Assembly (NCBI GenBank): GCA_950097015.1
Contig: CATNEN010000029.1
Location: 1,426,001-1,490,000 of the forward strand
Length of the DNA stretch: 64,000 bases
Direction of reading: 5' to 3'
Source of the DNA: Macrostomum hystrix
Taxonomy: Eukaryota; Animalia; Platyhelminthes
Position numbers and translations under genes: made by a program. Numbering within the stretch: position 1 is the first letter of the stretch; each line of letters starts with the position of its first letter. The notes under the pieces are model-generated. The model searched no databases, was not told the origin of the DNA, and was given only the letters and a program-made list of their open reading frames with translations. Shown piece by piece: positions 12,921-30,382 of this stretch.

Positions 12921-13126
12921 CTGTTAATTTCGGCCAGTTAGGACGCACATATTTAGAATTATTTGCATCTAGTTGACCCGGAGCCGAGTAAAGGCTTTAA
13001 TATGAGTTAATTCGCATTCGAAAACTTCTATAAACTCAATTCAACAGCGATTAGTTGTTACAAAACAGGTTTCAATCCTTGACTAGGTAGGGGGGGTGGG
13101 GGCTCAGTCGGACCCAATCGGCGAAT

Positions 13127-15520
13127 TCAGCCATTGGTCTCGCCGTCCAAGGCCAGGAGGGACGGATCGCTGCTAACTGACGAGTGCAGCATCTCAGAGA
13201 ACAGCTGCGGCATTCTGATAGCCTGTTTATCAAAGTAGGAGGCCCAGAAGCCAAGGCAGAACAGCCGGATTGTATTGATGCGGCCAGACATGGCCAGCAG
13301 GCGAGTGCGCCTGACAGTGTCCGGGCAGACCCGGCGCAGCTCTCTGATGAACCTGGCCTGCAGATTTTCTATTTCTTCCGCATTGTCAAACTGTTGGCCA
13401 GGCGGGCATTGCAGCAGGAATATGGTCTTCAATAGTAGGTACTCCATCCTGGTCACACCCCATTCGGTCAGCAGGCCGGCCGTTAGTCGAACCTGCTGTC
13501 TGGCGCGCATCGCGATGGCATCGCTGAACATGTTCGGCCGGGTGGAGGGCACAGAGACGTTGCCGGCGAAGTGAATAATACCCGAGTATGGCACGGAGTT
13601 CATTGACACCTCGAAGGCGACCAGGCCGGCCCAGTGGGTCTGCAGCAGGCGGATCCGGTCCGGCAGGGAGATCGAGGAGAATCCGGGCAGTCGTTTGGCG
13701 AATTCTACCAGGCGTGCTGAGTGCCGGTCCAGGCACGGCAGCACGATGATGGCGAGGTTTCGCGAATCCACGGAGTTGAAGTCTTCGCCAATGGTGTTCT
13801 CCATGTTGAAGATGGGAAGGTCCAGAGCTTGCAAGGCCTATAGCGGGTGTTAGAGATTGCGCAGGGTGCACAAGCTGAGGCACGGCAGAGAGATAGAAGA
13901 GTGAGAGAGGGAGATGGAGACGGAGAGAGAGGGGGAGATGGAGACGGAGAGAGAGGGAGATGGAGACGGAGAGAGAGGGAGATGGAGACGGAGAGAGAGG
14001 GAGATGGAGACGGAGAGAGAGGGAGATGGAGACGGAGAGAGAGGGGGAGATGGAGACGGAGAGAGAGGGGGAGATGGAGACGGAGAGAGAGGGGGAGATG
14101 GAGACGGAGAGAGAGGGAGATGGAGACGGAGAGAGGGAGATGGAGACGGAGAGAGAGGGAGATGGAGACGGAGAGAGAGGGAGATGGAGACGGAGAGAGA
14201 GGGGGAGATGGAGACGGAGAGAGAGGGGGAGATGGAGACGGAGAGAGAGGGAGATGGAGACGGAGAGAGAGGGGGAGATGGAGACGGAGAGAGAGGGAGA
14301 TGGAGACGGAGATAGAGGGAGATGGAGACGGAGAGAGGGAGATGGAGACGGAGAGAGAGGGAGATGGAGACGGAGAGAGAGGGAGATGGAGACGGAGAGA
14401 GAGGGGGAGATGGAGACGGAGAGAGAGGGGGAGATGGAGACGGAGAGAGAGGGAGATGGAGACGGAGAGAGAGGGGGAGATGGAGACGGAGAGAGAGGGG
14501 GAGATGGAGACGGAGAGAGAGGGGGAGATGGAGACGGAGAGAGAGGGAGATGGAGACGGAGAGAGAGGGAGATGGAGACGGAGAGAGAGGGGGAGATGGA
14601 GACGGAGAGAGAGGGAGATGGAGACGGAGAGAGAGGGAGATGGAGACGGAGAGAGAGGGAGATGGAGACGGAGAGAGAGGGGGAGATGGAGACGGAGAGA
14701 GAGGGAGATGGAGACGGAGATAGAGGGAGATGGAGAGAGAGAGGGAGATGGAGACGGAGAGAGAGGGAGATGGAGACGGAGAGGGGGAGGCAGAGAGGGT
14801 GATGGAGATAAGAGGTAAGAGAGAGGAGAGAACCTCCAATCCCAAGCACCAACGAAATAAACGCAGGCGATTTAGCTCGTAATTAAAGTTATCGCAATTT
14901 TTTTAAAGAGAGTGTGAGAGGTGGAAAAGCAGATGTAGCGATAGTGAGAGGCCAGTTTCATAAAGCTAGCAAACCTCGGTCAGCGTTTCACGGCCGCAGC
15001 TTCCGTCCTCCGGTGAGGGCGGTGACGGGGTTTCGCCGCCTCTACCGCCGCCACGTTTTGCTGAAATCACCGAGGCAACCGAGACAGAGGCGGCAGCCGA
15101 GGCGGACGAGGCAACGGCAGTAGCGGCAGCCCTGGCGGCGGCCCTGGCGGCGGCCCTGGCAGCCGAAGCCTCCGCCCGACGCAGCCGGGGATAACGCTCA
15201 GACTCGGTGCCCGGAGCCACAGTGCGGAGCATACCCGGCCGCATGCCGGACATCAGGCAGCGGCGCCAGCGGCATGCCGGACACTGCTTGCGGCTGGCGT
15301 TGTTGACAGCGCACAGCGGCGGTGGTTGCTGCTGCTGCTGGCCGTCAGCATTGCCAACGCACTGGTAGGTCAAGCAGGAGTGCACTGTTCGCTTAAAGAA
15401 CGCTTTGCAAGCATTGCACGTGGCCGCTCCGTAATGCACCCCGGTGGCTGGGAGGCCGCAGACGGCACAAAAACCAACGGAGGAGACGGACGAGCCACTG
15501 AGAAACTCGAAGTCACTCAT
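13127..15520 (-). CDS. Nuclear receptor paralog A, ERR/NR3B-like, P-box CNACKA (~418 aa)
   Basis: complement(join(13127..13837,14975..15520)) = 1257 nt; phase-0 intron GAG|GTTTGC...TATAG|GCC. C4 zinc fingers CAVC...HYGAATCNACKAFFKR...CPACRWRRC. LBD signature FAKRLPGFSSISLPDRIRLL and AF-2-like QLFSEML. Confidence 0.9.
13900..14800. repeat. Purine-rich 20/22-bp minisatellite (GAGAGGGAGATGGAGACGGA)n filling the NR-A intron
   Basis: Direct reading; units vary in GA/GG length. Confidence 0.95.
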
Positions 15521-15629
15521 TGCTGAATCTCTTTAATCAACTGAAAAATTGACAGCCCGCTAGTGCTTCTGGAAGTGTTCGCGCAGTCTTTCCAAATTTC
15601 GGCTGAAATTCAAGCGAGCTTTTGTCTAT

Positions 15630-16870
15630 GCCATTTCTGTCACTCCATCTGCCTGTATTTCTGTCACTCCATCCGCTTGTATTTCTGTCACTCCATCTGC
15701 CTGTATTTCTGTCACTCCATCCGCCTGCATTTCTGTCACTCCACCTGCCTGTATTTCTGTCACTCCATCCGCCTGCATTTCTGTCACTCCACCTGCCTGT
15801 ATTTCTGTCACTCCATCCGCCTGTATTTCTGTCACTCCATCCGCCTGTATTTCTGTCACTCCATCCGCCCTTATTTCTGTCACTCCATCCGCCTGTATTT
15901 CTGTCACTCCATCTGCCTGCACTTCTGTCACTCCATCCGCCTGTATTTTTGTCACTCCATCTGCCTGCACTTCTGTCACTCCATCCGCCTGTATTTCTGT
16001 CACTCCATCCGCCTGTATTTCTGTCACTCCATCTGCCTGCACTTCTGTCACTCCATCTGCCTGTATTTCTGTCACACCATCTGCCTGTATTTCTGTCACT
16101 CCATCCGCCTGTATTTCTGTCACTCCATCTGCCTGTATTTCTGTCACTCCATCTGCCTGTATTTCTGTCACTCCATCCGCCTGTATTTCTGTCACTCCAT
16201 CTGCCTGTATTTCTGTCACTCCATCCGCCTGTATTTCTGTCACTCCATCCGCCTGTATTTCTGTCACTCCATCCGCCTGCATTTCTGTCACTCCACCTGC
16301 CCGTATTTCTGTCACTCCATCCGCCTGTATTTTTGTCACTCCATCCGCCTGTATTTCTGTCACTCCGTCTGCCTGCACTTCTGTCACTCCATCCGCCTGT
16401 ATTTCTGTCACTCCATCCGCCTGTATTTCTGTCACTCCATCCGCCTGCATTTCTGTCACTCCACCTGCCCGTATTTCTGTCACTCCATCCGCCTGTATTT
16501 CTGTCACTCCATCTGCCTGCACTTCTGGCACTCCATCCGCCTGTATTTCTGTCACTCCATCTGCCTGCACTGCTGTCACTCCATCTGCCTGTATTTTTGT
16601 CACTCCATCCGCCTGTATTTCTGTCACTCCATCCGCCTGTATTTCTGTCACTCCATCTGCCTGCACTGCTGTCACTCCATCTGCCTGTATTTCTGTCACT
16701 CCACCTGCCTGTATTTCTGTCACTCCACCTGCCCGTATTTCTGTCACTCCATCCGCCTGTATTTTTGTCACTCCATCTGCCTGTATTTCTGTCACTCCAT
16801 CTGCCTGCACTTCTGTCACTCCATCCGCCTGTATTTCTGTCACTCCATCCGCCTGTATTTCTGTCACTCC
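15630..16870. repeat. 24-bp minisatellite (TATTTCTGTCACTCCATCCGCCTG)n
   Basis: About 51 units, beginning ~110 bp upstream of the NR-A ATG. Confidence 0.96.
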
Positions 16871-17224
16871 AGTTTTTGTTACTGCCCGCACAATAAATAG
16901 GTAACTAATCACTTAGTGGCTGATCTAACTTTGGTAAAATAATACAAGAAATAGCGCTCTAAAAACACTATTATTAAGTAGAAAAGATTTGCCTGTATGC
17001 AAAGAATTTTACTGACGAATAATAAAGCATAAGTAAAATAGTCTGTCGCAGCATCAGGGGAGTGTTATGCAAATTATACTTTTCCTTTATTGGTTTTGAT
17101 ATACGGAACATCTTATTTATGAATAGGTAAAAATATACATGCATTGTCAGTCTTAAAAGTTTATATGAAACAGATTTGCACAGCAATTCTACTTCAGATC
17201 AAATTTAAAAAATATCTATCAGGA

Positions 17225-17445
17225 TCTGTCACTGTATCTACCCGTGTCACTGAATCGACCTGTGTCACTGAATCTACCTGTGTCACTGAATCTACCTGTG
17301 TCACTGAATCTACCTGTGTCACTGAATCTACCTGTGTCACTGTATCTACCTGTCACTGAATCTACCTGTGTCACTGTATCTACCTGTCACTGAATCGACC
17401 TGTGTCACTGAATCTACCTGTGTCACTGAATCTACCTGTGTCACT
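17225..17445. repeat. 18-bp minisatellite (TGTCACTGAATCTACCTG)n
   Basis: About 12 units read directly. Confidence 0.9.
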
Positions 17446-18316
17446 AAACCCTGTGTCTGTCACGGGTCAGTAACCGTCGAAACGGATGAAAAACAAAAAT
17501 AAAAATAAAATAAAAATGCTTTGTACATGTTTGAATTTCTTGGACGAGCGAAGATAAAAAATCTAACGTTTTTTGCTAGAATTATTAAAATTTAAATTTT
17601 AATATTGAAACTAGGCGTGAATTTATCTAATCAGTGATAGTCAATTTTAGGTCATATTACCATTATATATGTATCTACAGTTGAACATGTAGAAAATATA
17701 AACAATATAAACACAAGAATAAAGTAAACCTATGCTATGCTAATTGAGTAACCTGATTGATAGATAATATCAAGCTAATCGAATGAATTCATTAAAGGAA
17801 AACTACTTTGAGTATGACAAACTTTGCTCAACTAGTCAAGGCGTAAGTTTTAACTAATGTGAAATTATTTAAAAAATCGACACAGCCATGGTTAATTGGG
17901 AAAAAGTAAAATCGGAAACCGAAAGTACAAAAAAATCAAGACGTAAAAAATCTATTTCGAGTAGAAGAAATCACAAAGCACTTACATACAGAAACATATT
18001 AAAGCATCGATGCATTCCGGATATCAATCAACATAACAAACTTCGTGTTCATATTAGACAAGATAGTCTTCCATCCCACGCCAAAATCTAAATTCACTCA
18101 AAGTCCACCCACTCAATGTACTCTCGCTCAACGCCCACCCCACGCCAAATGTACATTCGTTCAGTCTAGCCTACGTGCGATGTACATTAGCTGAACGACC
18201 AACTCATGTCAAGTGTACACTTCCTTAAAGTCTACCCTACCCCTGATGTACATTTGCACCACAACCACAAGACGCTTAAATTTAATCACGCTCATCCTCA
18301 ACCCACGATTGTACTT

Positions 18317-21300
18317 TTAAATTCTCTGCGAAGAAACTGCATGCGGAATTTCATTCAAAGAAAACTGCAGTATCTCAGACATTAGCTGGGGCGGTAGGAA
18401 GGCGTTGCTGCGCACCACAGTCGACCAGAAGCCAACTGAAGCAATCTTCAGCGCCATCAGATTGCTCAGCAGCATGAGCAGACTGCTCCGTCGCAAACTA
18501 TCCGGACAGAGCTGGCGCAGCTCGCGCAGGTAACCGGCTTGAACCTGTTCGATCTGGCCGGAGTCCTGCCACTCATGACCGGCTGGGCATTCCAATAGGA
18601 AGATGGCTTTTAGCAGTAGAAATTCATATCGGGTCACCTGGTTAGGGGTTAGGTAATTTTGATGATGCACTTGAGGTGCACTTGAAAGATATCTATTACG
18701 TTGTGAAATTTCGACTTTGTGAAAGCACCCCTATGTCTCATCCCACCCAGCCCATTTAGTTGTCTGCTCTGTCTGTTCTTTCTCTCCCCCCTCTCCCTAT
18801 GTACGCTTGCTGTTAGTACGTTATCGATTTTTTCTTTGCCTAGTCTTAGCTTTGAATTCTCTATTTGTATGCGCCCCACCCGCGGCTATTTAATCTCCAC
18901 AATTCACCCACCCCAATTAAATGAACATGAGCGGCTATTTAATCTCCACAATTCACCCACCCCAATTAAATGAACATAAGCGGCTATTTAATCTCCACAA
19001 TTCACCCACCCCAATTAAATGAACATGAGCGGCTATTAAATCTCCACAATTCACCCACCCCAATTAAATGAACATGAGCGGCTATTTAATTTCTACAATT
19101 CACCCACCCCAATTAAATGAACATGAGCGGCTATTTAATCTCCACAATTCACCCACCCCAATTAAATGAACATGAGCGGCTATTTAATCTCCACAATTCA
19201 CCCACCCCAATTAAATGAACATGAGCGGCTATTTAATCTCCACAATTCACCCACCCCAATTAAATGAACATGAGCGGCTATTTAATCTCCACAATTCACC
19301 CACCCCAATTAAATGAACATGAGCGGCTATTTAATCTCCACAATTCACCCACCCCAATTAAATGAACATGAGCGACTATTTAATCTCCACAATTCACCCA
19401 CCCCAATTAAATGAACATGAGCGGCTATTTTATCTCCACAATTCACCCACCCCAATTAAATGAACATGAGCGGCTATTTAATCTCCACAATTCACCCACC
19501 CCAATTAAATGAACATGAGCGGCTATTTAATCTCCACAATTCACCCACCCCAATTAAATGAACATGAGCGGCTATTTAATCTCCACAATTCACCCACCCC
19601 AATTAAATGAACATGAGCGGCTATTTAATCTCCACAATTCACCCACTCCAATTAAATGAACATGAGCGGCTATTTAATCTCCACAATTCACCCACCCCAA
19701 TTAAATGAACATGAGCGGCTATTTAATCTCCACAATTCACCCACCCCAATTAAATGAACATGAGCGGCTATTTAATCTCCACAATTCACCCACCCCAATT
19801 AAATGAACATGAGCGGCTATTTAATCTCCACAATTCACCCACCCCAATTAAATGAACATGAGCGGCTATTTAATCTCCACAATTCACCCACTCCAATTAA
19901 ATGAACATGAGCGGCTATTTAATCTCCACAATTCACCCACCCCAATTAAATGAACATGAGCGGCTATTTTATCTCCAAATTCACCCACCCCAATTAAATG
20001 AACATGAGCGGCTATTTTATCTCCACAATTCACCCACCCCAATTAAATGAACATGAGCGGCTATTTAATCTCCACAATTCACCCACCCCAATTAAATGAA
20101 CATGAGCGGCTATTTAATCTCCACAATTCACCCACCCCAATTAAATGAACATGAGCGGCTATTTAATCTCCACAATTCACCCACCCCAATTAAATGAACA
20201 TGAGCGGCTATTTAATCTCCACAATTCACCCACCCCAATTAAATGAACATGAGCGGCTATTTAATCTCCACAATTCACCCACCCCAATTAAATGAACATG
20301 AGCGGCTATTTAATCTCCACAATTCACCCACCCCAATTAAATGAACATGAGCGGCTATTTAATCTCCACAATTCACCCACCCCAATTAAATGAACATGAG
20401 CGGCTATTTAATCTCCACAATTCACCCACCCCAATTAAATGAACATGAGCGGCTACAAGGTCGGCCTACCGTGCATGCTGTTTTAGCTCTCGCCGTGTTA
20501 CCCAAAGACGGTCTCTGACAAAGCGGTTCAAATTTAACAAAAAATTGTTCCAATAAATCACCTGCCACAATGTTAGCCATCTAATCAAGCAGCGTAATTG
20601 TTGGCCAGTTTTTGGCGAGAATATTCCACGAAACTGATGTCCGTAGCTCTCGTCCATGGCCAGGTCGGTGCAAAACACAATATTGCCATTGTAAGGCACC
20701 GAGTTGATCGCCACTTCCAGTGCGCACAGATCAAGGCAGTGCAGCTGCAGCAGCAGCACCTGTGCAATCAGTGCGATCGATTATTGAAGTTGAAATATCA
20801 TAGACTAGGAATTAGAAAGACAGTCAAACCCCTAGAGACACTCGCCTTATCCGGCATGGGCAGCGGGCCAAAGCCGGGCACAGATTTGGCAAACTTGACC
20901 AGATCCCCGATCAGCCGGTCCATGCACAGCGTCAGTGTGTAGGCTAGCCTAACCGGCGTCTCCGCATTGCCTGTAGCCGACACGTCGCTTAATGAGAACG
21001 TCGGCGAGTCAATGGAGATTAGCTGACTGAGCAATGTCAGCGATGAAGATTCCGACGACGAAGTTGGCTGCTGAGGCGGTGGAGGCGGTGGAGGCGGCGG
21101 AAGCATTTCTGTGGAGGCTGATGCTTCCGGTTGACTCTGCGAAGACTGCTGAAAACTGCTTCAATGTGTGAAAAAAGAACATCTGCTGGATATTTTCCGA
21201 AACAGTTGTAGAATAGACCATTAATTTTTATATATTTAAATCAGGGAAATAAGGATCAAAGATATGAGGATCAGGGATCTCAAGAATCAAGGATATAAGG

Positions 21301-23818
21301 ATCAAGGATATGAGGATCAGGGATCTCAAGGATCAGGGATATAAGGATCAAAGATCTGAGGATCAGGGATCTCAAGAATCAAGGATATAAGGATCAAGGA
21401 TATGAGGATCAGGGATCTCAAGGATCAGGGATTTCAAGGATCAGGGATCTCAAGGATCAAGGATATAAGGATCAGGGATATGAGGATCAGGGATATGAGG
21501 ATCAGGGATATGAGGATCAGGGATATGAGGATCAGGGATATGAGGATCAAAGATCTGAGGATCAGGGATATCAAGGATCAAGGATATAAGGATCAAGGAT
21601 ATAAGGATCAAGGATATAAGGATCAGGGATATGAGGATCAGGGATCTCAAGAATCAAGGATATAAGGATCAAGGATATAAGGATCAGGGATATGAGGATC
21701 AAGGATATAAGGATCAAGGATATAAGGATCAGGGATATCAAGGATCAAGGATATAAGGATCAGGGATCTCAAGAATCAAGGATATAAGGATCAAGGATAT
21801 AAGGATCAGGGATATAAGGATCAAGGATATAAGGATCAAGGATATAAGGATCAAGGATATAAGGATCAAGGATATAAGGATCAAGGATATAAGGATCAAG
21901 GATATAAGGATCAGGGATATGAGGATCAGGGATCTCAAGAATCAAGGATATAAGGATCAAGGATATAAGGATCAGGGATATGAGGATCAGGGATCTCAAG
22001 AATCAAGGATATAAGGATCAAGGATATAATGATCAGGGATATGAGGATCAAGGATATAAGGATCAAGGATATAAGGATCAGGGATATCAAGGATCAAGGA
22101 TATAAGGATCAAGGATATAAGGATCAAGGATATAAGGATCAAGGATATAAGGATCAAGGATATAAGGATCAAGGATATAAGGATCAGGGATATGAGGATC
22201 AGGGATCTCAAGAATCAAGGATATAAGGATCAAGGATATAAGGATCAGGGATATGAGGATCAGGGATCTCAAGAATCAAGGATATAAGGATCAGGGATAT
22301 GAGGATCAGGGATCTCAAGAATCAAGGATATAAGGATCAAGGATATAAGGATCAGGGATATGAGGATCAGGGATATGAGGATCAGGGATCTCAAGGATCA
22401 GGGATTTCAAGGATCAGGGATCTCAAGGATCAAGGATATAAGGATCAAAGATCTGAGGATCAGGGATCTCAAGAATCAAGGATATAAGGATCAGGGATTT
22501 GAGGATCAGGGATCTCAAGGATCAGGGATTTCAAGGATCAGGGATCTCAAGGATCAAGGATATAAGTATCAGGGATATGAGGATCTGGGATCTCAATATT
22601 CAGGAATCTCAATATTCAGGGATCTCAAGGATCAGGGATCTCAAGGATCTGGGATCTCAAGGATCTGGGATCTCAAGGATCAGGGATTTCAGTGATCAGG
22701 GATGTCAAAAATCAGGGATCTCAATCCTTATATCATTAACCTCAATCCTTATATCCTTATATCATGGATATAAGGATCAGTGATCTGAGGATCAGGGATC
22801 TAAGGTTCATGGATCTGAGGATCAGGGATCTGAGGATCATGGATCTGAGGATCAGGGATCTGAGGATCTTGGATCTGAGGATCATGGATCTGAGGATCAT
22901 GGATCTGAGGATCATGGATCTGAGGATCATGGATCTGAGGATCATGGATCTAAGGATCAAGGATCTGAGGATCATGGATCTGAGTATCTAAGAAACAGAG
23001 AATCAGGGATCTGAGGAGCAGGTTTCTGAGTATCTAAGAAACAGAGAATCAGGGATCATAGATCATGGATCTGAGGATCAAGGATCTGAGGATCATTGAT
23101 CTGAGGATCAGGGATCTGAGGATCATGGATCTGAGGATCTAAGAAACTGAGAATCAGGGATCTAGGGATCAGGGATCTGAAGATCAGGGATCTGAGGATC
23201 AAGGATCTGAGGATTAGGGATCTGAGGATCATGGATCTGAGGATTAGGATCTGAAGATCAGGGATCTGAGGATCAGGGATCTGAGGATTAGGGATCTGAA
23301 GATCAGGGATCCGAGGATCATGGATCTGAGGATCTAAGAAGCAGAGAATCGGGGATTTGAGGAGCAGGTATCTGAGTATCGAGCATCACCTACCCCTGAG
23401 CAGCAGTCTCTTGCTGCCGCAGCCTCGGATATCGACTGCTCTCAGTGCCGGCCTCCACGCTGCGCAGCATGCCAGGCTGCATGTTGGCCCGCACACAGCG
23501 CCGCCACCGGCAGGCCGGGCACTGCTTTCTGTTGGGCTCCCGCACTGGGCAAAGTTCGTCGGCTCCAGAATAGCGCCTGGCGCATTGGTAGGTCAGGCAG
23601 GAGTGCACGGTGCGCTTAAAGAACGTCTTGCACGCGTTGCACGTGGCGGCGCCGTAGTGAACGCCGGTGGCGCGCAGGTCGCACACAGAGCAGCCACCCA
23701 GGATGTCAATGATTGGACGCTCCTGCTGCTGCTGCTGCTGATTCTGCTGCTGATGATTAGCAGAAGCCGACGCATCGGCATCAATAACTATAGCCGTGTC
23801 CTTTGTCTGTCCTGCCAG
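18317..23818 (-). CDS. Nuclear receptor paralog B, ERR/NR3B-like, P-box CNACKT (~417 aa plus an initiator Met; no in-frame ATG in the first visible exon)
   Basis: complement(join(18317..18637,20562..20759,20846..21155,23394..23818)); intron phases 2/0/0 are consistent, and the middle intron is GC-AG. DBD CSVC...CNACKTFFKR; LBD FAKSVPGFGPLPMPDK|VLLLQLH; C-terminal QLMSEIL. The exon opens at acceptor TTGCAG|CTG. Confidence 0.85.
18880..20456. repeat. 49-bp minisatellite in NR-B intron 3, ~32 highly homogeneous copies
   Basis: Unit AATCTCCACAATTCACCCACCCCAATTAAATGAACATGAGCGGCTATTT; period 49 checked at 18901/18950. Confidence 0.97.
21245..23375. repeat. 7/14-bp-based AGGATCA/AGGATAT satellite filling NR-B intron 1
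   Basis: About 2.1 kb of TAAGGATCAAGGATA / TGAGGATCAGGGATC variants. Confidence 0.95.
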
Positions 23819-23929
23819 CTGCAACCATAATAAATGAAAAGTTAAACTCTGCTGTTATTAGAAACATAAGTAAGTGTTTAAAACCTAAAAGTAAATTTTT
23901 AACACTACATCTGGAATCATGTAGGCCAT

Positions 23930-25350
23930 CTTAATCAGCCTACTTTGAGTAGCTAATCTCAACAAGCCTGTTCTGAGTAGCTAATCTCAACCAGCCTGCT
24001 TTGAGTAGCTAATCTCAACCAGCCTGTTCTGAGTAGCTAATCTCAAGCAGCCTACTTTGAGTAGCCAATCTCAAGCAGCCTGTTTTGAGTAGCTAATCTC
24101 AACCAGCCTACTTTGAGTAGCTAATCTCAACAAGCCTGTTCTGAGTAGCTAATCTCAACCAGCCTGCTTTGAGTAGCTAATCTCAACAAGCCTGTTCTGA
24201 GTAGCTAATCTCAACCAGCCTGCTTTGAGTAGCTAATCTCAACCAGCCTGCTTTGAGTAGCTAATCTCAACCAGCCTGTTCTGAGTAGCTAATCTCAAGC
24301 AGCCTACTTTGAGTAGCTAATCTCAAGCAGCCTACTTTGAGTAGCTAATCTCAAGCAGCCTACTTTGAGTAGCCAATCTCAAGCAGCCTACTTTGAGTAG
24401 CCAATCTCAAGCAGCCTGTTTTGAGTAGCTAATTTCAAACAGCCTGTTTTGAGTAGCTAATCTCAACCAGCCTACTTTGACTAGCTAATCTCAACCAGCC
24501 TACTTTGAGTAGCTAATCTCAACCAGCCTACTTTGAGTAGCTAATCTCAAGCAGCCTACTTTGAGTAGCCAATCTCAAGCAGCCTGTTTTGAGTAGCCAA
24601 TCTCAAGCAGCCTACTTTGAGTAGCTAATTTCAAACAACCTGTTTTGAGTAGCTAATCTCAAGCAGCCTACTTTGAGTAGCTAATCTCAAGCAGCCTACT
24701 TTGAGTAGCTAATCTCAAGCAGCCTACTTTGAGTAGCCAATCTCAAGCAGCCTACTTTGAGTAGCCAATCTCAAGCAGCCTGTTTTGAGTAGCTAATTTC
24801 AAACAGCCTGTTTTGAGTAGCTAATCTCAACCAGCCTACTTTGACTAGCTAATCTCAACCAGCCTACTTTGAGTAGCTAATCTCAACCAGCCTACTTTGA
24901 GTAGCTAATCTCAACCAGCCTACTTTGAGTAGCTAATCTCAAGCAGCCTACTTTGAGTAGCCAATCTCAAGCAGCCTGTTTTGAGTAGCCAATCTCAAGC
25001 AGCCTACTTTGAGTAGCCAATCTCAAGCAGCCTGTTTTGAGTAGCTAATTTCAAACAACCTGTTTTGAGTAGCTAATCTCAAGCAGCCTACTTTGAGTAG
25101 CTAATCTCAAGCAGCCTACTTTGAGTAGCCAATCTCAAGCAGCCTGTTTTGAGTAGCTAATTTCAAACAGCCTGTTTTGAGTAGCTAATCTCAACCAGCC
25201 TACTTTGACTAGCTAATCTCAACCAGCCTACTTTGAGTAGCTAATCTCAAGCAGCCTACTTTGAGTAGCTAATCTCAACCAGCCTACTTTAAGTAGCCAA
25301 TCTCAAGCAGCCTGTTTTGAGTAGCTAATCTCAACCAGCCGATTCTGAGC
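23930..25350. repeat. 28-bp near-palindromic satellite with 364-bp (13-mer) higher-order repeat
   Basis: Unit TGAGTAGCTAATCTCAACCAGCCTACTT. The variant block AATTTCAAACAG...TTGACTAG recurs at 24431, 24795 and 25159. Confidence 0.95.
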
Positions 25351-26319
25351 ACCTAAAGATAGTTTAGAGTAGTTGTCACGAAGAAACAGATTTAAAAAGA
25401 AATAAGCAAAGCCAGTTCAATCTGTGGAGACTGACTATAACAAAATAAAGAATGCAGTTAATTAAATTTCTCATTTTCTAGTAAACACAAGCAGTGCTGG
25501 TATCTTTCAAAACAAAAAAGTTTAAATGAAATTACAACAAAAAACGAAAAATGACAGGTAAACGAATCTAATACAAAAACTCAAATAACAACTGGGGGCA
25601 CATTTAACGGATACTTCAAATTGAATACTTAACTGCGGTCAGTTGAAAACTGTTGCTGGTTTTCTGATAATATTGGATTGTGTTTTGTCAATAAAATATC
25701 AACAGTTAAAACTGACTACTCTACTAAGCAGTAGTAAGTAACGCGCATTTTAACATATATCTTGGGAAAGAAGGGGCGCTTGTTGCGAACAAATTCAAAG
25801 AACAATTCAAATAATGAATAAAACCTATCTGTCTACTTGAAAAGAAATTTCAGTTATTCATCTATTATTAAATAAAGAGTCTTAGAAAAAACTCAGTAAC
25901 ATGATATTTTACTCTAAGATTGTAAGCAGGCAATTTAGTTTAAAACAGTAATCTGACTCACAAAGTAAAACTTCAACTTAAAATTAATCAACTTAAAGTG
26001 CAGCTGAAAAATAGCAAGTAGACATTAAACTGAATACATTGATCCAAAGCAATTGTGCACAAAATAGTGCAAAAACGCAAGTTAATAAACTAGACAAATG
26101 ACATATCAACAAAAACTTCCACAAGTACTATAAAGAATTGCTAGTCCATATTCGTCGCATGTTAGCTACTCATAGTGACTAAGTAGTATATAACTGCAAC
26201 TTTCTTATTTAAAAAGAAATTTTTTTATACAACATCATTGATAAAATATGCTCAGGGTACTCGCAAAATATATTTTCTTTTAGAACAAATTCAGATAAAA
26301 AAATTCTGAAAACCTAAAA

Positions 26320-27262
26320 GAGTGAATGACCAACTGAATGAACCATTGAATTGGACTGAATGACCAACTGAATGAACCATTGAATTGGAGTGAATGACCA
26401 ACTGAATGATACATTGAATTGGACTGAATGACCAACTGAATGAACCATTGAATTGGACTGAATGACATACTGAATGATACATTGAATTGGACTGAATGAC
26501 CAACTGAATGAACCATTGAATTGGAGTGAATGACCAACTGAATGAACCATTGAATTGGACTGAATGACCAACTGAATGAACCATTGAATTGGACTGAATG
26601 AGCAACTGAATGAACCATTGAATTGGACTGAATGACCAACTGAATGAACCATTGAATTGGAGTGAATGACCAACTGAATGAACCATTGAATTGGACTGAA
26701 TGACATACTGAATGATACATTGAATTGGACTGAATGACCAACTGAATGAACCATTGAATTGGAGTGAATGACCAACTGAATGAACCATTGAATTGGACTG
26801 AATGACCAACTGAATGAACCATTGAATTGGACTGAATGAGCAACTGAATGAACCATTGAATTGGACTGAATGACCAACTGAATGAACCATTGAATTGGAG
26901 TGAATGACCAACTGAATGAACCATTGAATTGGACTGAATGACCAACTGAATGAACCATTGAATTGGACTGAATGACCAACTGAATGAACCATTGAATTGG
27001 ACTGAATGACCAACTGAATGAACCATTGAATTGGACTGAATGAGCAACTGAATGAACCATTGAATTGGACTGAATGACCAACTGAATGAACCATTGAATT
27101 GGAGTGAATGACCAACTGAATGAACCATTGAATTGGACTGAATGACCAACTGAATGAACCATTGAATTGGAGTGAATGACCAACTGAATGAACCATTGAA
27201 TTGGACTGAATGACCAACTGAATGAACCATTGAATTGGACTGAATGACTAACTGAATGAACC
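26320..27262. repeat. 34-bp minisatellite (TGAATGACCAACTGAATGAACCATTGAATTGGAC)n
   Basis: About 27 units; period checked at 26881/26915. Confidence 0.96.
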
Positions 27263-27345
27263 GGATAATTGTAATGATCGAGTTATATGCTTGTATTAAT
27301 ATGTTTCTGGTATCCATAACGACAGACTGCGCATCACGCAGGTGT

Positions 27346-30300
27346 TCAATACTCGGAGGTAGCGGCCGCGCTCTGTAGGGTGGCCAAATCTGAGGATATC
27401 CGGGGCACCTGGCCTAGAGAAAATGTCAGCATCTCGGACATCAGCGGCGGGGGCAAGAAGGTTGTCCGCTGCATCACTCGAGACCAATAGCCAACGTAGA
27501 ACACTTGGATAGCCGAGAGCATGCCGCTAAGCGAGAGCAGCTTGCCCCGCCTGGCATTGTCCGGACAGATGGCGCGCAGCTCCCTGAGGTAGGTGGCCTG
27601 GGCGGCCTGGATCAGATCTGGCCGGCGCCATTCTTCCAAAGGCGGAGCGGCGTCGAATAAGAACACGAGCTTCAATAGGAGAAACTCCGCCCAGGTCAGG
27701 CCGGTGGCGGTCAGGACGCGGGCCAGGCAGCGCATCTGGCTGCCGCAGCGGACTGGGATGAGGCCGGCCACGCTAGACGACTGGCGGGGGTCATTCAGTC
27801 AGTTAGTAAACAGTTTCTTTATATTTGCGCATTTCTACTTTGATGAGTAGGATAGTGCGCGAAATTTGCCAAAAAATAATTTTCTGTCATGCTTTATTCA
27901 TTTTTCTGAAATGTTCGACCCCATCACACAGTGACCCCGCTTCTGCCTACGGGGGGCCGGGTCGCACCTGCAGAATTCGAACTCCAGACCTGTGCAGAAA
28001 TATATGAGACAGGGAGAAGTGGATGACGCAGATGTGGGACAAAGGCAGACAGAAGGGCAGAGAAGACAGAGAAGACAGAAGGTCAAAGGAAAATACGAGC
28101 TCGTACTGATCAAAGCTGGGAAGAAATCACGAAGACGCCGCCAATTGGCCAAATCTGGCCGGGGTCTCTTTGGCGGCAGGTGTTTGCGCAGGCCAATTAT
28201 TTAAATCGGTGCAATTTTCACCTTCCACCTGGTACCAGGGAGCTTGTCGAAATCAACTACAAAGCAACGATTGTTCCTTTTGGAATTTTCATACAAGCCT
28301 GGCTAGTTACCGAAAAATGTGATCCATTTTCCAGTGTCACTGCCTGCCTCGTGCAGTCACCAGCTATTCACATATCTTTTAGCAGCTTAACTTCCAACAC
28401 CGACCCAGGCTTTAGTTATCAAACCAATTAATTCCATTATCCAATTATCTAGATCCCACCATTTCACTCTCTAGTTGCCATCCGATTCCATTTCATCCTT
28501 TAGTTTCCATCCCATTCCATCCTCTAGTTCCCATCCCATTTCATCCTCTAGTTCCCATCTCATCCCATCCACTGGTTCCCATCCCATTCCATCCACTAGT
28601 TCCCATCCCATCCACTGGTTCCCATCCCATTCCATCCACTAGTTCCCATCCCATCCACTGGTTCCCATCTCATCCTATCCACTGGTTCCCATTCCATTCC
28701 ATCCTCTAGTTCCCATCCCATTCCATCCACTAGTTCCCATCCCATCCACTGGTTCCCATCCCATTCCATCCACTAGTTCCCATCCCATCCACTAGTTCCT
28801 ATCCCATTCCATCCACTAGTTTTCATTTCATACCTTCCTCTAGCTCCCATTTATTTTCTTCCTCTCGTTCCGATCCCTTCCTCTTCCAGAAAATTCTATT
28901 TAAGCGCCGCAATCAGCTGTGTACACTGAGCCGCAGTCAGCTGTGTACACTGAGCCGCAGTTATCTGTGTACACTGAGCGCAGTCAGCTGTGTACACTGA
29001 GCCGCAGTTATCTGTGTACACTGAGCCGCAGTTATCTGTGTACACTGAGCCGCAGTTATCTGTGTACACTGAGCCGCAGTTATCTGTGTACACTGAGCCG
29101 CAGTTATCTGTGTACACTGAGCCGCAGTTATCTGTGTACACTGAGCCGCAGTTATCTGTGTACACTGAGACGCAGTTATCTGTGTACACTGAGCCGCAGT
29201 TATCTGTGTACACTGAGCCGCAGTTATCTGTGTACACTGAGCCGCAGTCAGCTGTGTACACTGAGCCGCAGTCAGCTGTGTACACTGAGCCGCAGTTATC
29301 TGTGTACACTGAGCCGCAGTTATCTGTGTACACTGAGCCGCAGTCGGCTGTGTACACTGAGCGCAGTCAGCTGTGTACACTGAGCCGCAGTTATCTGTGT
29401 ACACTGAGCCGCAGTTATCTGTGTACACTGAGCCGCAGTCAGCTGTGCACACTGTGCTTACCTGGTCCTCGCGTATGGCATAGCTGGCCGAGAATTTCAG
29501 ACTGCCATCGTAGGGCATGGAGTTGTAGGCCACGCGCCACACTGTGAGGCTGAGCCAGTGCAGCTGCAGCAGCCGGACCCGGTCCTCCATTGGCAGCTGG
29601 GTAAAGTCGGACAGTCGCTTAGAGAAGTCGATGAGATCTACGGCAAGTTTGTTAGTAGCTGCGCCAAGTTGAGCAGTGTGCTCATCCAGCTGGCTAGGCG
29701 AAGATGAAGCGGCCTGTAGCTGCTCGGCAGTTGCCTGCCTTAACTGCTGATGCAGCGGATCGTCCGGGGCGCAGCTGTTGAATAGCTCCGTCAGCTGGCA
29801 GACCAGGGCGCTGCGTTCCGACGCCAGATGGTCGCCGGGTATTGGCCGTTGTGCAGTCAGCTGGCGCATGAAGGCCGGAGGTTCGCGCCCCACTGGCAGG
29901 CTGGCCGCGCCAGATTTAACAGCTGGAGACGCCGACGAAGACGAAACGCCAGCGCCGGCGGAAGCTTGAACGTCAGCCGAAGGGCTGTCATCGGCTGTGT
30001 CGTTGTCGCTGATGTCTTCAATCACCCGGCCGCCGCCGGCGCCAATTGTCGGCGCAGTTGTCGGCGGTGTCGGAGTCTGGCTAGGTGAGGAGCAGCGGAC
30101 CAGAGCGGTCTGCATGCGGGCCTCCAGGCAGCGCACCCAGCGACAAGCCGGGCAGTGGCGCTTCCGGCCGGTTCTCGGCACGGGGCAGCGGGCGCCAGAC
30201 CGAAGCACCGGGCAGAAGTAGGTCACGCAGGAGTGCACAGTGCGCTTAAAGAAGGCTTTGCAAGCTTCGCAGGTGATTGCGCCGTAGTGATGCCCGGTTG

Positions 30301-30382
30301 CTTTGCGAAAGCAGACGGTGCATGGCTCGTTAAGAAGCTTTTGCTCTAATTGCTGCTGCTGTTGCTGCTGATCTTGGTGCAT
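27346..30382 (-). CDS. Nuclear receptor paralog C, ERR/NR3B-like, P-box CEACKA (~451 aa)
   Basis: complement(join(27346..27780,29462..30382)) = 1356 nt; phase-0 intron CAG|GTAAGC...CGCCAG|TCG. CEACKAFFKR is the ERR-type P-box. LBD: FSKRLSDFTQLPMEDRVRLL, YNSMPYDGSLKFSASYAIRED (resembles ERR SLPxDDKLxxAEDY) and PLMSEML. Confidence 0.9.
28480..28830. repeat. Degenerate pyrimidine-rich CCATCC/CTAGTT repeat (NR-C intron)
   Basis: Direct reading. Confidence 0.8.
28915..29452. repeat. 24-bp minisatellite (TGTGTACACTGAGCCGCAGTTATC)n next to the NR-C donor
   Basis: About 22 units; the array starts within ~10 nt of the 5' splice site. Confidence 0.95.

What the first reader, a model, noticed from the sequence alone, without database searches (positions are those of the whole stretch)
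13127..30382. Tandem triplet of ERR-like nuclear receptors with rewired DNA-recognition P-boxes
Seen: three complete, co-oriented DBD+LBD genes with P-boxes CEACKA (C), CNACKA (A) and CNACKT (B). Established: EACKA is the ERR (NR3B) P-box, and the P-box Glu makes a base-specific contact in AGGTCA half-sites. Also seen: none of the three has the ERR RGGR C-terminal extension motif. Inference: a lineage-specific ERR-derived expansion in which two copies recognise new response elements, forming a small diversified receptor system.
Basis: partly seen in the sequence, partly recalled or inferred. Interest (0 to 1): 0.8.

Follow-up and report, generated by a model that had tools for sequence, protein, structure and literature searches.

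The report
Flatworm ERR-like receptor gene trio
Three neighbouring genes of a Macrostomum flatworm encode real, selectively maintained nuclear hormone receptors of a flatworm-specific ERR-like group, two of them with an altered DNA-reading motif. The same three genes are already catalogued in the sister species M. lignano, so this is a sound but largely known family.

Summary
The minus strand carries exactly three nuclear-receptor genes in the order C, B, A. Their P-boxes are CEACKA, CNACKT and CNACKA, and none has the ERR RGGRQKY extension. I add that their D-boxes are 8, 10 and 15 residues long instead of 5.

They are orthologs of M. lignano MlERR2, MlUn6 and MlUn7 (Wu & LoVerde 2021), which Cheng et al. 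2021 filed under NR3/ERR. The same C-B-A order is found on M. lignano contigs.

All three are under purifying selection against M. lignano (dN/dS 0.06-0.21). Gene B is expressed: one RNA contig is spliced across all three of its introns. Expression of A and C could not be tested.

Membership of NR3 is well supported (96/88 and 98/97). Membership of ERR specifically is likely but not proven. The best outside hits of both DBD and LBD are ERRs. ML trees pair the family with vertebrate steroid receptors, but removal tests show a long-branch pattern and AU tests do not reject ERR.

The Asn P-box arose once, in the A+B ancestor. By analogy with FAX-1/PNR it should relax recognition of half-site position 2; this is untested.

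Elsewhere in this genome the scan has noted a CHACKS P-box receptor, probably the same family.

The parts
14975..15520 (-). Gene A exon 1: ATG, DBD (15245-15469) and hinge; 182 codons
   Evidence: ORF and zf-C4 E 5.9e-20. Donor GAG|GTTTGC at 14974, phase 0, at the position homologous to the M. lignano donor.
15401..15418 (-). Gene A P-box CNACKA (Asn codon AAT at 15413-15415)
   Evidence: M. lignano MlUn7 uses the same AAT codon.
15314..15358 (-). Gene A D-box, 15 residues (VGNADGQQQQQPPPL) instead of 5
   Evidence: In the AlphaFold model pLDDT drops to 61 here, while the fingers score 88-97.
13127..13837 (-). Gene A exon 2: whole LBD with AF-2 (PQLFSEML) and stop codon; 236 codons
   Evidence: Hormone_recep E 1.2e-13. 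Acceptor TATAG|GCC at 13838-9. Model pLDDT 91.6 with all top PDB fold matches NR3 LBDs. dN/dS 0.20.
23394..23818 (-). Gene B exon 1: N-terminus from LAGQTKD, DBD (23483-23692) and CTE. No genomic ATG. TTGCAG acceptor at 23819-23824.
   Evidence: zf-C4 E 6.2e-20. The 3' end is fixed by the loose end of the RNA contig, which reads ...RLRQQETAAQG. The start is discussed.
23624..23641 (-). Gene B P-box CNACKT (Asn codon AAC at 23636-23638)
   Evidence: M. lignano MlUn6 uses the same AAC codon.
23552..23581 (-). Gene B D-box, 10 residues (ARRYSGADEL)
   Evidence: M. lignano has 12 residues here.
20846..21155 (-). Gene B exon 2 (hinge to LBD helix 3, ends ...PMPDK)
   Evidence: A 756-nt contig of run X4 lies on 20845-21156 and is joined to exon 3. 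The boundaries are worked out.
20562..20759 (-). Gene B exon 3 (VLLLQLHC...LTLWQ). The intron before it (20760-20845) is GC-AG.
   Evidence: A joint skipping 86 nt in the X4 contig. The ends read GCGAGT...GCACAG. dN/dS 0.06.
18317..18637 (-). Gene B exon 4 (VTRYEFLLLK... AF-2 PQLMSEIL, stop codon)
   Evidence: The loose end of the X4 contig reads RYEFLLLKA. Hormone_recep E 1.9e-4. dN/dS 0.07.
29462..30382 (-). Gene C exon 1: ATG, DBD (30116-30322), hinge and N-terminal half of the LBD; 307 codons
   Evidence: zf-C4 E 5.2e-17 and Hormone_recep E 7.3e-6. Donor CAG|GTAAGC at 29461. 69% identical to M. lignano P0001.
30254..30271 (-). Gene C P-box CEACKA (Glu codon GAA at 30266-30268)
30188..30211 (-). 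Gene C D-box, 8 residues (PVLRSGAR)
27346..27780 (-). Gene C exon 2: C-terminal half of the LBD with AF-2 (PPLMSEML) and stop codon; 144 codons
   Evidence: The acceptor after ...CAG is set by homology to P0001 (REDQ|ASSVAGLIPV). 91% identical to M. lignano, dN/dS 0.08.

Best explanation
The stretch is a conserved head-to-tail cluster of three paralogous nuclear-receptor genes, transcribed C then B then A on the minus strand. They belong to a Macrostomum-specific, fast-evolving branch of subfamily NR3 that most probably descends from ERR (NR3B).

C is the ortholog of M. lignano MlERR2, B of MlUn6 and A of MlUn7. The duplications therefore predate the split of the two species.

Each gene encodes a full receptor:
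- a two-zinc-finger DBD whose core fold is intact;
- a D-box loop enlarged to 8-15 residues;
- a C-terminal extension without the basic RGGRQKY minor-groove motif;
- a canonical 12-helix LBD with an AF-2 helix.

Shown here: gene structure, orthology, synteny, purifying selection on DBD and LBD of all three, splicing and expression of B, and a single origin of the Asn P-box in the A+B ancestor.

Inferred:
- C still reads AGGTCA-type half-sites through its Glu.
- In A and B, Glu-to-Asn (two nucleotide changes) alters or relaxes reading of half-site position 2. In FAX-1/PNR, Asn at this position gives ANGTCA.
- B's Ala-to-Thr adds a further shift.
- Loss of the ERR extension and the long D-box make ERR-style monomer binding to TNAAGGTCA unlikely, so dimer or partner-dependent binding is more likely.

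Together the three would drive overlapping but distinct target sets.
For: Domains and P-boxes.

Orthology and synteny:
- C exon 1 is 69% identical to M. lignano BOX15_Mlig015060g1.
- The DBD tree gives winC+MlERR2 100/91*, winB+MlUn6 100/93* and winA with MlUn7.
- M. lignano contig NIVC01000087.1 carries the three genes in the same order and orientation, and NIVC01002152.1 the first two.
- The published DBD sequences match (PMC8363021 S2/S5).

Function:
- dN/dS is 0.06-0.21 in all eight exon comparisons, with dS 0.8-1.9.
- An RNA contig at over 99% identity is spliced across all three B introns.
- The Asn codons are conserved (AAT in A, AAC in B, in both species).

NR3 and ERR affinity:
- In the exhaustive search the next hits after the family are bona fide ERRs: 36 of the top 150, against 22 NR5B and 16 ER.
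- The A LBD exon alone scores 70 and 68 bits on invertebrate ERRs, against 43 for SR and 37 for ER.
- The NR3 clade including the family gets 96/88* and 98/97*.
- Without SR the family attaches to ERR, and without the family SR returns to ER.
- The LBD motifs S-[VI]-P-Y-x-G and SEML are shared with invertebrate ERRs.

Fold:
- LBD model pLDDT 91.6, and all top PDB fold matches are NR3 LBDs.
- In the DBD model the core scores 88-97 and the D-box loop 61.

The effect of Asn is taken from PMC2225407.
Against: - The ML trees place the family beside vertebrate NR3C, not ERR (98/93* for the LBD, 94/86 combined).
- The DBD tree leaves the family outside a canonical NR3 group (91/77).
- Attachment to ERR after SR removal has only 55/84 support.
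- Of the 37 CEACKA proteins outside the family, 36 carry the RGGRQKY-type extension. None of the family does.
- No DNA-binding data exist for any member.
- Expression of A and C was not shown here; only one reads call was allowed.
- dS near or above 1 makes the dN/dS values rough.
Confidence: 0.8

Rival explanations
1. The family is not ERR-derived. It is a separate old NR3 lineage related to the keto-steroid receptors (NR3C), or to the ER/SR stem. Its EACKA P-box would then be a convergent one-residue change from the ER-type EGCKA.
For: - Mac+SR gets 98/93* in the LBD tree and 94/86 in the DBD+LBD tree, under a site-heterogeneous model.
- The best PDB sequence hits of the A LBD are AncSR2, MR and AR.
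- The best fold matches are AncGR2, GR, PR and ER.
- The ERR extension and the 5-residue D-box are absent.
Against: - AU tests do not reject family+ERR (p 0.47 and 0.17).
- With SR removed the family joins ERR. With the family removed SR rejoins ER, the accepted topology. Each long branch thus has another home, which is the pattern of long-branch attraction.
- Invertebrate ERRs outscore SR for the LBD alone (70 and 68 bits against 43).
- The PDB holds only vertebrate ERRs, so its ranking is biased.
Confidence: 0.12
2. The Asn and Thr P-box changes do not create new response elements. A and B still bind AGGTCA-like sites, perhaps more loosely, or they act mainly through dimer partners. Their divergence would then lie in expression or in the LBD rather than in DNA specificity.
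For: - In NHR-67 and FAX-1, Asn at this position permits AGGTCA and gives relaxed ANGTCA binding rather than a new site (PMC2225407).
- The other base-contacting residues (the Lys of CK and the FFKR block) are unchanged in A, B and C.
- The LBDs diverge as much as the DBDs (33-36% identity between paralogs).
Against: - Glu to Asn needs two nucleotide changes.
- The Asn has been kept, codon included, in both paralogs over a divergence of dS about 1.
- The enlarged D-boxes and the A/B-specific extension are also conserved between species.

These points suggest selection on a changed DNA interface.
Confidence: 0.3
3. A and/or B are decaying or silent duplicates.
For: - B lacks a genomic ATG.
- B's last exon scores below Pfam's cut-off.
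- A's expression was not tested.
Against: - The frames are intact.
- dN/dS is 0.06-0.21 in every exon of A and B.
- B is spliced at three introns in RNA.
- The orthologs are intact in M. lignano.
- The Macrostomum spliced leader ends in ATG (PMC10468722), and a TTGCAG acceptor sits exactly at B's first codon.
Confidence: 0.02

Closest known systems
M. lignano MlERR2 (PAA60440.1), MlUn6 (PAA91460.1) and MlUn7 (PAA91461.1), from Wu & LoVerde 2021, PLoS One (PMC8363021); filed under NR3 (ERR) by Cheng et al. 2021
   Same: They are one-to-one orthologs by tree and synteny, with identical P-boxes (CEACKA, CNACKT, CNACKA). They share the gene order, the A/B extension GTES.RYPRL, the extra Cys in TVHSC[LV]TY, and the intron positions of B and of A's hinge.
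   Different: It is another species: exon identities are 69-91% and dS is about 1. The D-box lengths differ (B 10 against 12; A 15 against about 20). M. lignano's A ortholog has a repeat-filled intron inside the D-box that the window gene lacks. M. lignano's B ortholog has a genomic ATG where the window has CAG. The papers list DBDs only, and I found no mention of the tandem cluster in the text read (the term 'tandem' has 0 occurrences).
Canonical estrogen-related receptors (NR3B), e.g. Tubulanus ERR2-like XP_074661550.1 (P0018)
   Same: Gene C and four M. lignano members have the EACKA P-box. ERRs are the best outside hits for DBD+LBD and for the LBD alone. The LBD motifs S-[VI]-PY-x-G and AF-2 ..SEML are shared. 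The family attaches to ERR when SR is left out.
   Different: There is no RGGRQKY extension. The D-box has 8-15 residues instead of 5. A and B have Asn in place of the P-box Glu. Monophyly with ERR is not recovered in the full trees.
NR2E3-class receptors FAX-1/PNR (Asn at DBD position 19)
   Same: They carry Asn at the P-box position that contacts half-site position 2. This is the only experimental guide to what the change does: relaxed ANGTCA binding and dimeric sites only (PMC2225407).
   Different: They belong to an unrelated subfamily (NR2E) and the rest of the P-box differs (per PMC2225407, not checked here). The similarity is convergence at one residue, not kinship.
Vertebrate keto-steroid receptors (NR3C) and reconstructed AncSR2/AncGR2
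   Same: They are the nearest solved LBD sequences and folds (45 bits; TM 0.75-0.83), and the sister group in the ML trees.
   Different: Their P-box is CGSCKV, their D-box has 5 residues and their AF-2 motif differs (EMLVEII). The grouping behaves as long-branch attraction.

Membership tests
Nuclear receptor superfamily | A C4 double zinc-finger DBD followed by an NR ligand-binding domain in one gene | tested here: met
   zf-C4 at E about 1e-17 to 1e-20 in all three genes, with Hormone_recep downstream. All eight Cys are invariant. The LBD model has pLDDT 91.6 and an NR fold.
NR3 subfamily (ERR/ER/SR) | Groups with ERR+ER+SR to the exclusion of NR1, NR2 and NR5 in a phylogeny | tested here: met
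   LBD tree 96/88*; DBD+LBD tree 98/97*. The DBD alone is unresolved.
NR3B (ERR) | P-box CEACKA | tested here: inconclusive
   Met by C. Not met by A (CNACKA) or B (CNACKT).
NR3B (ERR) | C-terminal extension with the basic A-box R.RGGRQKY, used for TNA-AGGTCA monomer binding | tested here: not met
   Absent from A, B, C and all M. lignano members. Present in 36 of the 37 CEACKA proteins outside the family.
NR3B (ERR) | Canonical second finger with a 5-residue D-box | tested here: not met
   15, 10 and 8 residues. ERRs have 5.
NR3B (ERR) | Monophyly with bona fide ERRs | tested here: inconclusive
   The ML trees pair the family with SR. The AU test does not reject family+ERR (p 0.47 and 0.17). 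Without SR the family attaches within or next to ERR at 55/84. The published Bayesian support is only 0.56 (PMC8363021).
NR3B (ERR) | ERRs are the nearest relatives by sequence in both domains | tested here: met
   ERRs are the first outside hits in the exhaustive search. The A LBD alone scores 70 and 68 bits on ERRs, against 43 for SR.
Macrostomum MlERR/MlUn group | Orthology to the catalogued M. lignano genes by tree and synteny | tested here: met

The most novel reading that the evidence does not exclude
The Macrostomum family is not a derived ERR but a surviving protostome branch of the steroid-receptor side of NR3, sister to chordate NR3C as the ML trees show. Its conserved Asn P-box, long D-box and private C-terminal extension would then define a DNA-recognition mode not seen in any studied nuclear receptor.
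Probability: 0.1. Interest if true: 0.7.

Novelty: new member of a known kind. Interest (0 to 1): 0.32.

Why it matters
Flatworms were long thought to lack NR3 receptors, and Macrostomum is the exception. Here a second Macrostomum species shows that the odd P-boxes (Asn for the base-contacting Glu), the stretched D-boxes and the three-gene cluster are old and conserved under selection, and that gene B at least is expressed. They are therefore not annotation noise from one polyploid assembly. That makes A, B and C a natural series for asking how a nuclear receptor's DNA specificity drifts after duplication.

The practical value is modest. The family and its atypical P-boxes are already in the literature. 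The new points are comparative: synteny, selection, gene structure, and a diagnosis of why trees disagree about ERR.

Tried and rejected
- The word-index protein search found almost nothing beyond M. lignano. It returned 1 hit with C exon 1 and 5 hits with the DBD region. I therefore used the one exhaustive search.
- Exact look-ups of the UniProt models of MlUn7 (P0009, P0013) found no contig. The locus came through MlUn6 instead.
A and C therefore remain untested.
- Runs X1 and X2 touch only 32 nt of a Pro-codon stretch and are not evidence. X3 gave nothing.
- PDB sequence and fold ranks favour steroid receptors. I do not read this as kinship, because the PDB holds only vertebrate ERRs and the trees show a long-branch pattern.
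- The pseudogene reading is rejected.
- A paper search for Macrostomum with 'estrogen-related receptor' found nothing further.
- Cheng et al. 2021 is not in the library. It is cited only through Wu & LoVerde's addendum and S5 file.

Full report
**What is there.** The window is eukaryotic, and tandem minisatellites fill the introns and spacers. Between 13127 and 30382 the minus strand holds three nuclear-receptor genes.
- Pfam finds zf-C4 three times (E 5.9e-20, 6.2e-20, 5.2e-17) with Hormone_recep downstream of each.
- A six-frame motif scan finds exactly three DBDs in the 64 kb.
- None has an RGGR motif after the DBD.

**Gene models.**
- A has two exons, 15520-14975 and 13837-13127, giving 418 codons. 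The donor and acceptor are in phase 0 and lie at the position homologous to the M. lignano intron.
- C has two exons, 30382-29462 and 27780-27346, giving 451 codons.
- B has four exons: 23818-23394, 21155-20846, 20759-20562 and 18637-18317, giving 417 codons.
- B's three introns are proven by RNA. A 756-nt contig of run X4, over 99% identical, lies on exons 2 and 3 with the 86-nt intron removed. Its loose ends read the end of exon 1 (RLRQQETAAQG) and the start of exon 4 (RYEFLLLKA). That short intron is GC-AG.
- B has no in-frame ATG. A TTGCAG acceptor abuts its first codon, M. lignano has ATG at that very codon, and the Macrostomum spliced leader ends in ATG.
- Full-length comparisons used M. 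lignano proteins returned by the tools.

**Whose genes.**
- C exon 1 is 69% identical to M. lignano BOX15_Mlig015060g1.
- The supplementary files of Wu & LoVerde 2021 list DBDs that match one to one: MlERR2 = C, MlUn6 = B, MlUn7 = A.
- Their addendum states that Cheng et al. 2021 counted ten NR3 members in M. lignano, four with the ERR P-box and six atypical. The S5 file lists MlUn6 and MlUn7 among the atypical ones.
- M. lignano contig NIVC01000087.1 carries the three genes in the same order and orientation, and NIVC01002152.1 carries the first two.
- In the DBD tree each window gene pairs with its ortholog (100/91*, 100/93*), and A+B form a clade (95/88*).
- So the cluster, and the Glu-to-Asn change in the A+B ancestor, predate the species split. 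The window's species is a congener of M. lignano, not M. lignano itself.

**Are they functional?**
- Codon alignments of eight exon pieces against M. lignano give dN/dS of 0.06-0.21 at dS 0.8-1.9.
- The Asn codons are the same in both species: AAT in A and AAC in B. Coming from GAA/GAG they need two substitutions.
- B is expressed and spliced.

**Which subfamily?**
- An exhaustive HMMER search with MlERR2 against 1.84 billion representatives gives a block of ten M. lignano clusters at 400-100 bits. These include CHACKS and CVACKS P-box members.
- Bona fide ERRs follow immediately. Of the top 150, 36 are ERR, 22 NR5B and 16 ER.
- The A LBD exon alone, which cannot be influenced by the P-box, scores 70 and 68 bits on invertebrate ERRs, against 43 for SR, 37 for ER and 36 for RXR.
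- ML trees under LG+C20 put the family inside NR3 (96/88* for the LBD; 98/97* for DBD+LBD), but as sister of vertebrate NR3C (98/93*; 94/86).
- AU tests do not reject family+ERR (p 0.47 and 0.17).
- Without SR the family attaches to ERR (weak, 55/84). Without the family, SR returns to ER (91/80), which is the accepted topology. Each long branch has a different home when the other is absent, which is the signature of long-branch attraction.
- The LBD alignment shows S-[VI]-P-Y-x-G and ..SEML shared with invertebrate ERRs and not with SR.
- I conclude that NR3 is certain enough and ERR descent is likely, but ERR membership fails on the extension and the D-box and is unresolved on monophyly.

**Structure.**
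- The A LBD model (pLDDT 91.6) is a complete NR fold with a terminal AF-2 helix. All the best PDB matches are NR3 LBDs at TM 0.75-0.83.
- The A DBD model keeps both fingers and the recognition helix at pLDDT 88-97. The D-box insertion (61) and the extension (about 50) are loose.

**How it likely works (inference).**
- The P-box Glu position contacts half-site position 2. In NHR-67 and FAX-1, Asn there gives relaxed ANGTCA binding (PMC2225407).
- A and B should therefore read position 2 differently from, or more loosely than, C. B's Thr adds a second change.
- Without the RGGRQKY extension and with long D-boxes, ERR-style monomer binding is unlikely.
- The A/B-specific extension GTES.RYPRL is conserved between paralogs and between species, so it probably matters.

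**Novelty.** The family, its NR3 label and its atypical P-boxes are published for M. lignano. New here are a second species, the conserved three-gene cluster, the selection estimates, the RNA-proven model of B, the D-box growth, and the diagnosis of the tree conflict. The scan's other notes on this same stretch concern trans-splicing and intron positions. A CHACKS-P-box receptor noted elsewhere in this genome is probably another member of the family.

Noticed in passing
window 11201-32693: Every intron and spacer of the cluster is filled by a different minisatellite array, with periods of 15-49 bp and lengths of 0.2-2.1 kb. The M. lignano loci L001 and L002 show the same habit, with unrelated arrays.
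   Followed up: partly
L002:21700-22140 compared with window 15314-15358: The M. lignano ortholog of gene A has an intron, made of a short-period 'SVCL' repeat array, inside the D-box insertion of the DBD. The window gene reads straight through that spot with GQQQQQPPP. The D-box insertion site looks like a repeat-expansion hot spot that became an intron in one species.
   Followed up: partly
window 20760-20845 (minus): Gene B intron 2 is an 86-nt GC-AG intron (GCGAGT...GCACAG). Its removal is shown by an RNA contig.
   Followed up: yes
window 23800-23845 (minus): Gene B has no in-frame genomic ATG. A TTGCAG acceptor sits directly before its first codon (CTG, Leu), where M. lignano has ATG. 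The Macrostomum spliced leader ends in ATG (PMC10468722), so the start codon may come from the leader. A and C have acceptor-like sites 24 and 13 nt before their ATGs.
   Followed up: partly
window 13100-18700, runs X4-X7: Four small runs of one 2020 study hold 38-46% of the sampled words of this stretch, although exons make up only about 30% of it and 42% is tandem repeat. X4 is RNA. This could be unspliced or polycistronic pre-mRNA, DNA carry-over, or shared repeat words.
   Followed up: no
protein P0009 (UniProt A0A1I8JM97): The public M. lignano model of MlUn7 is scrambled: a piece of the LBD lies at residues 28-198, ahead of the DBD at 231. P0013 is another variant with a longer D-box read-through.
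   Followed up: no
proteins P0004 and P0014 (Logan transcript contigs): Fully canonical ERRs of unknown organisms are among the best outside matches: P0014 is the top outside hit of MlERR2 (112 bits) and P0004 scores 68 bits on the A LBD. If they come from flatworms, canonical ERR and this family coexist in the phylum.
   Followed up: no
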